DNA from: Anaeramoeba ignava BMAN
Lineage: Eukaryota > Protista > Anaeramoebae
Assembly (NCBI GenBank): GCA_028826165.1
Contig: JAPDFW010000063.1
Coordinates: forward strand, 1,379,719-1,443,718
Length of the DNA stretch: 64,000 nucleotides
Reading direction: 5' to 3'
Both the position numbers and the translations under genes were made by a program. Each line of letters starts with the position of its first letter. The first letter of the stretch is position 1. Under the pieces are notes generated by a model. That model did no database searches. It had not been told where the DNA came from and saw nothing but the letters and a program-made list of their open reading frames with translations. This document shows, in pieces, positions 47,863 through 51,464 of this stretch.

Positions 47863-50526
47863 ATGTCAATTTCAAATTATCTTTTATCAGAATTAAATGT
47901 CAAAATACCAGTTACTTTAATTGACCCAACAACAAATCATATTTTTTTAGAACCAATTACTTTACAAACTGGAGAAACATTTGACAGAAGCACTTTACAA
48001 AAAACTCAATGGATTAATCCAGAAACAAATGAATTAATTGACCAATCAACCACTTTTCTTAATTTAAAAATTCAACAACAAGTTACTCAATTTCTTATAA
48101 ATGAAGCAAATCAAGTAAATTTTTTTTTATTAAAAGCGAAAAAAGCAAAAACAAAAACAAAAACAAAAACAAACACAAAAACAAATTAAAACAAAACAAA
48201 TTTAAAAAAAAAAATTTTAATTTGAAAAAATTTTAATTTTAAAATTTTAATTTTAATTTTAATTTTAATTTTAATTTTAATTTTAATTTCAAAATGAATT
48301 TTAATTTTAATTTTAATTTTAATTTTAATTTTAATTTTAATTTTAATTTTAATTTTAATTTTAATTTTAATTTTAATTTTAATTTCAAAATGAATTTAAA
48401 TTTTAATTTGAATTTGAATTTTAATTTCAAAATGAATTTTAATTTCAAAATGAATTTTAATTTCAATCTTAATTTGAAAATGAATTTTAATTTCAATTTT
48501 AATTTTAATTTCAATTTTAATTTTCAAAATGAATTTTAATTTCAAAATTAGTTTTTTAAAAATCTTATTAAGAAAAATGTAAATGAACAAATTGATTCAA
48601 TAATTTCATTTGTTAGTTTTCTTCCACATGAAACTAACATTACAATTAAGCAAGAATCTCAAACATTAATGGGAAATTTTCTTGAGAAACAAATGAATGG
48701 AATTGGATCTAAAACATTTAATGATTCACTTTCAAATTTAAATGATAAAAAAAAATACAAATTAATTCTTTATTTACTTCATTCAGATCTTCCAAAAATT
48801 GTTATTTCATTGTTTGAAAATGCACCTGAATTCTTAAAAGTTTTTCCTGTTGATAATCCTCAATTAATGACTAAATTAAAACTTGTTAATGATTTTAATC
48901 CTGATTTAATTGATCGTTTTATTCAAGTTCTTGTTTCTCAAAAAAGTTATTATCAAGTTGAACAATATTTTGATTATGGTAAATTATAAATTATAATTTT
49001 ATTTAATTTTTAAAATGAATTTTCAAAATGAATTTTTAAAAAAATTAGGTATTCCAATAGAAAAAGCAGATGAATATTATGAAGGAATGATTGATCAATT
49101 TAATGAAAATCGAGATATTACACCTTCATTTTGTGAACATTTTGTAAACGTAATTTATAATCACTTGTTTTTATCAACCAGAGATGAAGATGAACTTCTT
49201 TTATGTGCAAATATCCTTCTTAAAAAATGTGTTCCAATAATTTTAAATCAAAAAAACTTGATTCAAACAGAAGAACAGAAAATAAGAGCAATTCTTCATA
49301 AAATTGCATTAATATTTGCATGTTTTCCAACAATATCAAAAATTACAAGTGATATTTTCTCAAAAGAATTACTTTTTGTTTCGTGTTTTTCACAAGTTAA
49401 TGTTGATACAAAAATTGCACATTCAGGAAGAAAATTAATAAGTATTTTATTACAAAGATTTTACTATGTTGATGATGGAAGAATTCATTTTGGAAATGTA
49501 GAAAACAAAATATCAAGAATGATTTCTTATTCGGTTCAACTTCCATTTATTTTATTAGCACAAATCAATCAACAATTTACAGAAAATGATGTTTCAAAAC
49601 ATTTAAGTGTTCTTTCCGAAGCTATGAAATCAAGACTTTTATGGGAAACAAAATTATCAATTATTGAGAAATTTGTTGATGAATATTCAAATCGAAAGAA
49701 TATTAAAATTCCATTAGCTGAAGAATTATTAAGTGAATTATTTCGAGCAATTAGAATGTTTCCTTTGAATACTTTACCAAGTGTTTTATCAACAATTGAA
49801 ATTATTTCAAGAGGAAGTGATAATAAACCAAAAATTGCAGATCAAAAAGGAATTCAAATCATTTTAGAAGCAATGAAAATGAACCAACAAAAATCCACAA
49901 ATTCAATCATTTGCAATTCATACATTATGGGAAATATCACAATATTCAACAGAAAACAGACAAATAATTGCAAATTTAAATGGGATTTTATTAATTTTAA
50001 ACACAATGGAAAATTTCAGAAAAAATTCATTTCTTCAAACTTATTCATGTGCAGCTTTATGGGTTCTTGAAGTAACTGAACATAATAGGAATATTATTGT
50101 TGAACATAATGGAATTCAATCTATTTTGGAATCAATGAAATTTCATCCTAAAAATGGAGAATTACAAGCTAATGCATGTGGATCATTATGGAATTTAGCT
50201 GTTAATGAAGAAAATAAAAGAATTATTGCACAAAATCAAGGAATTAAGTTAATTTTAAATTCAATGATTAATCATAAAAATAATGAAAAAGTTTTAAAAT
50301 ATGCTTGTGGAGCTTTAGCAAATATTGCTTCTATTGAAGGTATTTTTTATTTTATAATTTTAATTTATTTTAATTTAATTTTTATTTTATTATTTTTTAA
50401 ATAGAAAATATTGAACAATTAAAAAATCAACAATTAAAAGAAATTCTTGATTTTATTTTCCAAAATTATTCAAATGAACCTTCAATAATTAAACAAGCAA
50501 CAAGATTATCAACAAGAATTAATTAA
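47863..50526 (+). CDS. U-box + armadillo-repeat E3 ligase-like protein (multi-exon, probable indels near 49.9-50.0 kb)
   Basis: U-box IPVTLIDPTTNHIFLEPITLQTGETFDRSTL...NPET...NLKIQQ; ARM repeats ACGSLWNLA, ACGALANIA. Confidence 0.75.
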
Positions 50527-50720: not shown

Positions 50721-51291
50721 TTAAAGATTTGAACGAATTTTTTTAACTAAATCAAGATCATTTTTCATAATTGTAACTCTTTTAGCATGAAGTGCACATA
50801 AATTAGTATCTTCTAAAACTTCAACAATAAATGCTTCAGTTGCTTCTTGTAAAGCTGCAATAGCTGCACTTTGAAATCTTAAATCTGATTTATGTTCATG
50901 TGCAATATCTCTTACTAATCTTTGAAATGGTAATTTTCTTAATAATAATTCAGTTGATTTTTGATATTTTTTAATTTCTCTTGTTGCAACTGTTCCTGGT
51001 TTAACTCTTCTTTGTCTTTTTGCTGCAACTGAACTTTTCTTTCCTTTTTGTCCTTTTTGTGCTGTTTTATGACCTTTTTGTCCTTTTTGTCCTTTTCTTG
51101 CTTTTTGTGCTGTTTTTTGTCCTTTTTGTGCTTTTTGTCCAGTTTTTGACCTTTTTGACCTTTTGTGCTTTTTGTCCTTTTCTTGCTTTTTGTCCTTTTT
51201 GTGCAGTTTTTTGACCTTTTTGACCTTTTGATCCTCTATGTGGTCTTTTTCCACTTGTTGATTTTTTTCCAGTTGATTTTGTTCTTGCCAT
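50721..51291 (-). CDS. H3: Histone H3 variant with repeat-expanded N-terminal tail (~190 aa after restoring two single A's near 51145 and 51162)
   Basis: Starts MARTK; histone fold [28 protein letters not shown]...[13 protein letters not shown]...[15 protein letters not shown]. Confidence 0.9.
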
Positions 51292-51399
51292 TTTTTTTTA
51301 AAAATTAATTAATTAATAAAAAATAAATTTGAAAATAAAAATAAAAATGAAAAATGAAATAAAAATTTATTTTTCCTTTTTATATTTTTTTTAATCAAA

Positions 51400-51458
51400 T
51401 ATTATCCAATAATTTTTGATTTTTATTATTTTTAAATCTCTTAATTTATTGGATAATA
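51400..51458. promoter_or_regulatory. Inverted pair of CCAAT boxes upstream of the H3 variant
   Basis: TATTATCCAATAA (51400-51412) and its exact reverse complement TTATTGGATAATA (51446-51458), 109-167 bp upstream of the H3 ATG. Confidence 0.6.
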
Positions 51459-51464
51459 GTGTTT

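What the first reader, a model, noticed from the sequence alone, without database searches (positions are those of the whole stretch)
50721..51291. Histone H3 variant with ~20 tandem K(G/A)Q repeats inserted in the N-tail
Seen: after ARTK4STGKK9STSGK14RPHRGS the tail runs [67 protein letters not shown]. Two A's must be restored in A-runs, giving 190 aa, about 54 more than canonical H3. The canonical K27/K36 context is replaced. The fold keeps Q68, F84, T107 and canonical loop-1 length, so it does not meet the usual CenH3 criteria. Inference: a novel H3 variant whose tail is a polyvalent lysine array (multiplied modification sites, with KARK echoing the ARK motif) or a built-in H1/protamine-like DNA-compacting arm, e.g. 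for cysts or AT-rich satellites.
Basis: partly seen in the sequence, partly recalled or inferred. Interest (0 to 1): 0.8.

Follow-up and report, generated by a model that had tools for sequence, protein, structure and literature searches.

The report
Anaeramoeba's everyday long-tailed histone H3
This is one of five near-identical genes for the ordinary histone H3 of the very AT-rich amoeba Anaeramoeba ignava, whose tail carries a 65-residue lysine-every-third-residue array found in no other organism searched; the two frameshifts in this copy are most likely sequencing errors.

Summary
Window 50721-51291 (-) reads as a histone H3 with 19 K-x-x(-x) units plus KGKK in its tail, broken by two 1-base losses in A-runs.

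The organism is Anaeramoeba ignava (Metamonada, 81% A+T).

This is not a rare variant. It is the bulk H3: five copies against four each of H4, H2B and H2A, with no canonical 136-aa H3 found. A 16-base promoter box occurs 17 times in the genome, and all 17 sites lie upstream of core histone genes, this copy included. A sixth, diverged paralogue (P0121, fold dS about 1) keeps a similar array but lacks the box.

The array was found only in these six genes, both in the genome and in 1.84 billion protein representatives.

This copy has no private substitution. The assembly is Nanopore plus Pilon, so the frameshifts are probably homopolymer errors (about 75%). GenBank bridges the breaks with a spurious 85-nt intron.

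Function is inferred only: a built-in polycationic arm (tail charge +35 against +13) that binds DNA and may be tunable by acetylation.

The scan had already found this family on other DNA of this genome (s1-692295).

The parts
50721..51291 (-). Histone H3 gene copy (GenBank M0811_07055). As assembled, the frame is broken twice. The stop codon is at 50721-50723.
   Evidence: Pfam PF00125 E=2.4e-37 on the frame-2 piece.
51229..51291 (-). Conserved H3 head, residues 1-21. K4, T6, K9, S10, T11, G13, K14 and P16 sit at canonical positions.
   Evidence: Alignment A1. Of the 21 residues, 19 are identical in paralogue P0121.
51036..51228 (-). Lysine-periodic array, residues 22-86 of the intact protein: 19 K-x-x(-x) units plus KGKK. 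It is 193 nt here and 195 nt in the intact copies.
   Evidence: The array occurs only in the six H3 genes of this genome.
51161..51164 (-). First frameshift site: A4 here, A5 in all four intact copies.
51143..51147 (-). Second frameshift site: A5 here, A6 in all four intact copies.
51131..51215 (-). The 85-nt GT..AG 'intron' of the GenBank model (P0001, 161 aa). It bridges both frameshifts and is judged spurious.
   Evidence: reproduces P0001 only with an 85-nt deletion; the segment is 65.9% A+T, like the coding array, against 92-95% in the flanks and 91.86% for real introns (PMC11550330).
50724..51035 (-). K27-like and K36-like remnant of the tail, then alpha-N and the histone fold (residues 87-190).
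   Evidence: gap-free alignment to PDB H3.3 chains, E=2e-42; helices at 101-119, 122-133, 138-171 and 177-189.
51399..51414 (-). Proximal histone-promoter box AATTATTGGATAATAT, about 120 nt upstream of the ATG.
   Evidence: all 17 genome-wide matches lie upstream of core histone genes, and the reversed control pattern gives 0. One search supports this.
51441..51463 (-). Distal partner box (TATTATCCAATAAAT), in inverted orientation to the proximal box.
   Evidence: it is conserved upstream of the H3, H4 and H2B genes.

Best explanation
Shown: the window holds one of five near-identical copies of the bulk histone H3 gene of Anaeramoeba ignava. The protein is 190 aa and about 21 kDa. It has a canonical H3 head (K4, K9/S10, K14). 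A 55-residue net insertion then replaces the K18-K23 stretch with a lysine-every-3-4-residues array that has no acidic residue. A K27-like GKKS, a K36-like AAKR and a gap-free H3.3-type fold follow. These genes share a histone-specific promoter module with the H4, H2A and H2B genes.

Inferred (about 75%): the two 1-base deletions in this copy are uncorrected Nanopore homopolymer errors in a multi-copy region that short-read polishing could not resolve. On that reading the copy is functional.

Inferred mechanism (about 40-45%): two such tails leave each nucleosome beside the entry and exit DNA. Together they add about 44 positive charges and act as a built-in polycationic arm. The arm would clamp linker and adjacent DNA, helping to wrap and compact an 81% A+T genome. 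Its lysines resemble amplified K18/K23-type acetylation sites, so acetylation could dial the charge down.
For: Copy number and absence of any other H3. Promoter box exclusive to core histone genes, 17 of 17 sites. All 5 variable sites among the copies are synonymous, and the window copy has no private substitution. The paralogue P0121 has diverged to fold dS about 1.0 and dN 0.098 yet keeps a 60-odd-residue array with the same K spacing. The array is 34% G+C in a 19% G+C genome, against the mutational bias. It is H3-specific within the genome and has no relative among 1.84 billion representatives or in the tail word search. Tail charge is +35 against +13. The assembly method was Nanopore, Racon, Nanopolish and Pilon. 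The gene has 24 A-runs of 5 or more. At least 9 bromodomain matches and a MYST acetyltransferase gene show that acetyl-lysine machinery exists.
Against: Two deletions 18 nt apart are unusual for either explanation. The other 16 core histone gene copies are all intact, so residual errors are not rampant. DNA binding, acetylation and even presence of the full tail in chromatin (it could be clipped) are untested. H1 genes exist, so an extra linker-binding arm is not obviously needed. No orthologue with the array was seen among annotated A. flamelloides proteins, so the array may be young at the genus scale.
Confidence: 0.6

Rival explanations
1. The window copy is a real, very recently inactivated pseudogene of the bulk H3 family. 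Both A-run deletions exist in the DNA, and the locus makes at most a 74-aa truncated product.
For: The frameshifts are in the deposited assembly. Two rounds of Pilon did not remove them. All 16 other core histone gene copies are intact, so errors are not everywhere. Five H3 copies against four of each partner leaves one spare.
Against: There is no private substitution in 571 nt of gene, and the promoter boxes are intact. Both changes are losses of one base in A-runs, the typical Nanopore error. Identical paralogues defeat short-read polishing. Other follow-ups on this assembly also met suspected homopolymer frameshifts (s1-698228, s1-703071; unchecked notes).
Confidence: 0.22
2. The array is chiefly a multivalent modification and reader platform: about 20 iterations of a K18/K23-like site that recruits bromodomain or other readers with high avidity. 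On this view it is not a DNA-binding arm.
For: The insertion sits exactly where K18-K23 lie, and its units (K, T/G/A, A, Q) resemble KQLATKAARK. The genome has at least 9 bromodomain matches, a MYST acetyltransferase, a few SET-domain matches and chromodomain matches. H3 K9-K27 acetylation is conserved across eukaryotes (10.1101/2021.11.30.470311).
Against: There are no modification data. Unmodified, a +35 tail will bind DNA whatever else it does, so this view overlaps the best explanation rather than excluding it.
Confidence: 0.3
3. The array is a selectively neutral low-complexity expansion made by replication slippage on A-rich codons. It is tolerated because the tail is disordered, as with the insertions common in proteins of other AT-rich genomes.
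For: It is a tandem DNA repeat with 9-nt and 39/48-nt periods. The genome is 81% A+T. The tail is predicted to be unstructured, in a low-confidence model. Array length and unit mix differ between the two paralogues.
Against: It is the most G+C-rich part of the locus. It contains no Asn or poly-Lys runs. The K spacing of 3-4 and the lack of acidic residues are kept in a paralogue with fold dS about 1. Differences among the five copies are all synonymous. The motif occurs in no other gene of the genome.
Confidence: 0.12
4. It is a specialised H3: a centromeric H3, or a stage-specific compaction variant (cyst or sperm-like).
For: No clear CenH3 was found in the genome scans. Long N-terminal extensions are common in CenH3s (general knowledge).
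Against: There are five copies, a promoter shared with the other core histones, and no other H3 to serve as bulk. Loop 1 has canonical length, and Q68, F84 and T107 are kept.
Confidence: 0.03

Closest known systems
Canonical histone H3 / H3.3 (e.g. PDB 4hga_B, 3av2_A)
   Same: ARTK head; alpha-N plus histone fold aligning gap-free to residues 40-133, with 50-59% identity to canonical-type H3s over the aligned region; an H3.3-like SAAIAAL motif; K4, K9/S10, K14, K56 and K79 present.
   Different: A 55-residue net insertion of lysine-periodic repeats replaces the K18-K23 stretch. The tail is 96 residues against 41, and its charge is +35 against +13.
Paralogue P0121 (KAJ5079986.1, 'histone H3-like 5-related', A. 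ignava)
   Same: Of the 21 head residues, 19 are identical. The array has the same K spacing. The fold is 85% identical.
   Different: Single copy. It lacks the histone promoter box. Its array is dominated by KGH-KTAQ units. It is probably the replacement-type H3.
Sperm-specific H2B/H1 with SPKK repeats (sea urchin) and plant H2A.W with a KSPKK tail (general knowledge, not tested here)
   Same: Core histones carrying appended short basic repeats that bind linker or minor-groove DNA and promote compaction.
   Different: Those are specialised variants on H2B or H2A with S/T-P-K-K motifs. Here the repeats sit on H3, have no S/TPKK motif, and are in the constitutive bulk histone.
Linker histone H1 C-terminal domain
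   Same: A disordered, lysine-rich stretch of about 100 residues acting at the nucleosome entry and exit (general knowledge).
   Different: H1 is a separate protein with a winged-helix domain. A. ignava encodes H1-like genes as well (PMC11550330 supplement).
Divergent H3 tails of other protists (trypanosomatids, PMC12400321) and K-rich tails of Lokiarchaeota histones (10.1101/2021.11.30.470311)
   Same: Lineage-specific departures from the conserved H3 tail; lysine-rich tails arising independently.
   Different: Those diverge by substitution or are unrelated tails. None is a tandem-repeat insertion inside an otherwise canonical H3 tail.

Membership tests
Histone H3 | Core histone domain (Pfam PF00125) above the curated cut-off | tested here: met
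   128.3 bits against a cut-off of 26.4 for the window's frame-2 piece; 118.2 bits for the intact 190-aa protein.
Histone H3 | N-terminal ARTK head, then alpha-N and the three-helix fold collinear with solved H3 structures | tested here: met
   gap-free alignment to H3.3 chain residues 40-133, E=2e-42; invariant columns shared with 10 canonical H3s; helices in the expected places, in a low-confidence model.
Histone H3 | Assembly into nucleosomes with H4, H2A and H2B | not testable with these tools
   Partner histone genes are present. There is no biochemical evidence.
Bulk (co-regulated, multi-copy) H3 | Copy number matching the other core histones, with no alternative canonical H3 | tested here: met
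   5 copies against 4 H4, 4 H2B and 3+1 H2A. The only other H3 genes are one paralogue with a similar array and one distant histone-fold protein.
Bulk (co-regulated, multi-copy) H3 | Cis-regulatory element shared with the other core histone genes | tested here: met
   all 17 genome-wide matches of the 16-mer box are upstream of core histone genes, including the window copy.
Bulk (co-regulated, multi-copy) H3 | S-phase-coupled, abundant expression | not testable with these tools
No histone 3' stem-loop was found, but that feature is not defining outside animals.
Centromeric H3 (CenH3) | Lengthened loop 1 and divergence at Q68, F84 and T107; usually a single gene | tested here: not met
   no loop-1 insertion, and all three residues are kept; five copies.
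Processed or decaying pseudogene | Frame-breaking changes present in the organism's DNA, accompanied by other decay | tested here: inconclusive
   Two frameshifts are in the assembly. There is no private substitution and the promoter is intact. The read check was not possible.
Collagen-like Gly-X-Y repeat | Uninterrupted Gly at every third residue over many triplets | tested here: not met
   GQK runs are broken after 2-3 triplets by KTAQ, KAR or KAQ. Pfam Collagen matches only the paralogue, at E=0.043 and below the cut-off.

The most novel reading that the evidence does not exclude
In Anaeramoeba ignava the whole H3 pool may carry an about 20-fold amplified K18/K23-like module. This module would work as a built-in, acetylation-tunable polycationic clamp on entry, exit and linker DNA. 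That would be a new way of organising bulk chromatin, possibly evolved to wrap one of the most A+T-rich eukaryotic genomes. It would also mean that the most conserved histone tail can be rebuilt in a free-living eukaryote without a back-up canonical H3.
Probability: 0.35. Interest if true: 0.8.

Novelty: new variant of a known kind. Interest (0 to 1): 0.6.

Why it matters
The H3 N-terminal tail is among the most conserved protein segments in eukaryotes, and its K9-K27 lysines carry modifications conserved across eukaryotes (10.1101/2021.11.30.470311). Here the only H3s of an organism have that segment expanded into a 65-residue lysine array. This nearly triples the tail charge, and no canonical H3 remains in reserve. 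If the protein is what sits in chromatin, it offers a natural experiment. It would show how much of the 'histone code' layout is dispensable, how tail charge shapes nucleosome wrapping on extremely A+T-rich DNA, and whether core-histone tails can take over linker-histone-like roles. For annotation, the GenBank model of this copy (161 aa, with an 85-nt intron) is wrong. In addition, the exact 190-aa product of the intact copies is absent from the 15-billion-protein collection searched.

Tried and rejected
One caveat: the Rfam scan took whole paralogous loci (L001, L003) by reference, and the flank of L003 (as of L005, which was not scanned) is paralogous to that stretch.

2. Relatives of the tail. 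The word search on residues 1-92 found only the two A. ignava models plus a collagen-like chance hit. The exhaustive phmmer search found only P0001. The long 'H3' hits I fetched were mis-modelled canonical H3s or H1-H3 fusions.

3. A. flamelloides orthologue. None appeared in the top lists, although the paper lists more than 30 H3 genes per strain. Their tails remain unseen.

4. Exact look-ups of the 190-aa protein, of the 74-aa frameshift product and of the L028 protein found none of them in the collection. This is uninformative about reads.

5. CenH3 hunt. The only extra H3-like match (L028) gives a weak CENP-T_C hit, so it is not a CenH3.

6. Histone 3' stem-loop: none found.

7. AlphaFold monomer: mean pLDDT 51. 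It is usable only to say that no structure is predicted for residues 1-100.

8. Collagen-like reading of the GQK triplets: rejected.

9. The 85-nt intron: rejected on composition and on the intact paralogues.

10. Joined sequences. I did not search any joined or read-through version of the window gene. Its pieces were searched apart, and the intact paralogue L003 was used by reference. The only joining was a local script test of which deletion reproduces P0001.

Full report
**What is in the window**

On the minus strand an ATG at 51291 opens a reading frame that starts [21 protein letters not shown] and continues with K-G-Q-type units. The frame fails after 44 codons. A short stretch continues in a second frame, and the rest runs to a TAA at 50721-50723 in the third frame. 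The third-frame piece matches the Pfam core-histone domain at 128 bits.

**The reconstruction is confirmed by paralogues**

A six-frame scan of the window's own 42.8-Mb assembly with PF00125 found six H3 genes. Four of them (L001 and L005 on contig 91, L003 and L004 on contig 64) have uninterrupted 190-codon frames.

The DNA alignment and a site-by-site comparison give three results:
- The five copies differ at only five coding sites, all synonymous third positions.
- The window copy has no private substitution.
- Its only private differences are A4 instead of A5 at 51161-51164 and A5 instead of A6 at 51143-51147.

**Organism and annotation**

- The best database hit is P0001, a 161-aa 'hypothetical protein M0811_07055 [Anaeramoeba ignava]', on a contig of 1,443,718 bases. 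That length equals the position in its contig of the window's last base.
- P0001 can be reproduced from the window only by deleting 85 nt. The GT..AG version of that deletion is 51131-51215, which spans both frameshifts.
- That 'intron' is 65.9% A+T, like the surrounding coding array. The flanks are 92-95% A+T, and real A. ignava introns are 91.86% A+T (PMC11550330). I take it to be a gene-predictor artefact.
- The exact 190-aa sequence is not in the 15-billion-protein collection.
- The genome paper lists five H3-family genes for A. ignava in its PANTHER table and does not discuss histones in its main text.
- No paper in the searchable library discusses Anaeramoeba histones.

**It is the bulk H3, not a minor variant**

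The genome holds these core histone genes:

| Histone | Copies | Notes |
|---|---|---|
| H3, 190-aa type | 5 | the window copy is one of them |
| H3 paralogue P0121 | 1 | 184 aa, diverged |
| H4 | 4 | |
| H2B | 4 | |
| H2A | 3 | plus one variant ending in SQVY |

No canonical 136-aa H3 was found. A permissive protein search with the fold found only the same six genes plus one distant histone-fold protein, L028. L028 gives only a weak CENP-T_C match.

About 90-170 nt upstream of the ATG, the H3, H4 and H2B genes carry an inverted pair of CCAAT-containing boxes. The H2A genes carry two or three copies of one of the boxes. The 16-mer AATTATTGGATAATAT occurs 17 times in the whole genome. All 17 sites are upstream of core histone genes, including window 51399-51414. 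The reversed control pattern occurs 0 times. The diverged paralogue lacks the module, as expected of a replacement-type H3.

The CenH3 criteria are not met. Loop 1 has canonical length, and Q68, F84 and T107 are kept.

**Anatomy of the tail**

Aligned with ten canonical-type H3s, the protein shows a single 55-residue insertion after the K18-equivalent position.
- Head: K4, T6, K9, S10, T11, G13, K14 and P16 sit at canonical positions.
- After the array: GKKSS resembles ARKSA around K27 and is a twin of the TGKKST motif at K9. AAKRQ resembles GVKKP around K36. The K27/K36 context is therefore reduced, not simply replaced.
- Array (residues 22-86): 19 units, namely KGQ x10, KTAQ x3, KAQ x2, KAR x2, KTGQ x1 and KGH x1, followed by KGKK.
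- Whole tail: 96 residues with 27 Lys, 8 Arg and no acidic residue. Net charge is +35, against +13 for a canonical-type metamonad H3. The protein is 20.95 kDa.
- At DNA level the array is a 9-nt repeat with 39- and 48-nt higher-order periods.

**Signs of selection**

- The array is the most G+C-rich part of the locus, 34% in a genome of about 19%. This runs against the mutational bias.
- All differences among the five copies are synonymous.
- The paralogue P0121 has diverged to dS about 1.0 and dN 0.098 in the fold. It still keeps an array of about 60 residues with the same lysine spacing (3 residues fifteen times, 4 residues five times) and only one acidic residue.
- The array motif occurs in no other gene of the genome.

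These points argue against a neutral slippage product.

**Uniqueness**

- The tail word search found only the two A. ignava models.
- An exhaustive phmmer search of 1.84 billion representatives gave 17,008 H3-like hits. Only P0001 matched through the tail.
- Long hits that I inspected were mis-modelled canonical H3s.
- No annotated A. flamelloides protein with such a tail surfaced, although that species has many H3 genes. [quoted passage not shown]

**Frameshifts: error or pseudogene?**

Indirect evidence favours assembly error:
- Both changes are one-base losses in A-runs.
- The gene has 24 A-runs of five or more bases.
- The assembly was built from Nanopore reads corrected with Racon and Nanopolish, then polished twice with Pilon on bowtie2-mapped reads. 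Such polishing is weak where five identical copies make short reads ambiguous; this last point is established practice and my inference.
- The copy shows no other decay, and its promoter boxes are intact.

Against this, the other 16 core histone gene copies are all intact. I put error at about 75% and a real recent pseudogene at about 22%.

**How it probably works (inference)**

H3 tails leave the nucleosome between the DNA gyres at the entry and exit site (established structural knowledge). Two 96-residue tails add about 44 positive charges per nucleosome compared with canonical H3. The most economical reading is a constitutive polycationic arm that binds linker and neighbouring DNA. Such an arm would stabilise wrapping and compaction of an 80.65% A+T genome.

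The unit composition resembles the K18-K23 stretch that it replaces. The genome also encodes at least nine bromodomain matches and a MYST acetyltransferase. Charge tuning by acetylation, or multivalent reader binding, is therefore plausible.

H1-like genes exist, so the tail does not replace a missing H1. The AlphaFold model has low confidence (mean pLDDT 51). It places the four expected helices and predicts no structure in residues 1-100. None of this mechanism is shown.

**Relation to earlier notes of the scan**

The same protein family was flagged before on other DNA of this genome (s1-692295, s1-707795, s1-686708). One follow-up reached the same 'everyday H3' reading. I reached it independently from copy number and added the promoter-box evidence. 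That follow-up says the repeats replace the K27 region. My alignment suggests instead that a K27-like GKKS remains. Notes s1-698228 and s1-703071 report other suspected homopolymer frameshifts in this assembly; they are unchecked.

**Verdict**

I class it as a new variant of a known kind. Interest is 0.6, resting on a bulk H3 with a rebuilt tail that the literature searched does not describe.

Noticed in passing
window 51399-51414 and 51441-51463; the same module in L001, L003-L005, L007-L014 and L016-L019: A histone-specific promoter module made of an inverted pair of CCAAT-containing boxes (TATTATCCAATAAAT ... AATTATTGGATAATATTTGATT) 90-170 nt upstream of the ATG. All 17 genome-wide matches of the 16-mer are at core histone genes. 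The H2A genes carry 2-3 copies in one orientation.
   Followed up: yes
L028:982-2082 (G000 contig 58, about 44.3-45.4 kb): A 367-aa protein with acidic SE/TE repeats, a (TRKKQ)n basic repeat and an H3-like histone fold followed by about 110 more residues. It gives only a weak CENP-T_C match (E=0.0022). The scan noted it earlier as a possible H3-H4 doublet (s1-698221). No clear CenH3 was found in this genome.
   Followed up: partly
L007-L010 (H2B), L011 (H2A variant), L016-L019 (H4): H2B has an extended N-tail with KGKGKGKG runs (152 aa). One H2A paralogue ends in SQVY, an H2A.X-like motif. No H2A.Z was evident in the PF00125 scan.
   Followed up: no
L006 (G000 contig 20, about 23.7-24.2 kb) = P0121: A single-copy H3 paralogue (184 aa) with a KGH-KTAQ-dominated array and no histone promoter box. 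It is a likely replacement-type (H3.3-like) H3.
   Followed up: partly
window 49015-50404 (+): An armadillo-repeat gene next to the H3 copy changes reading frame somewhere before 50006, which could be an intron or another indel. The same gene end flanks the H3 copies L003 and L005, so the H3 gene lies in a segmental duplication.
   Followed up: no
L029 (G000 contig 81, about 368.7 kb): A linker-histone (PF00538) winged-helix match preceded by a K/S-rich N-terminal region; the open frame ends in what looks like an intron. The genome paper's supplement lists two H1-family genes.
   Followed up: partly
window 51131-51215: GenBank model M0811_07055 (KAJ5076191.1, 161 aa) removes 85 nt of coding array as an intron to bridge the frameshifts. 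The exact 190-aa product of the intact copies is not in the protein collection searched.
   Followed up: yes
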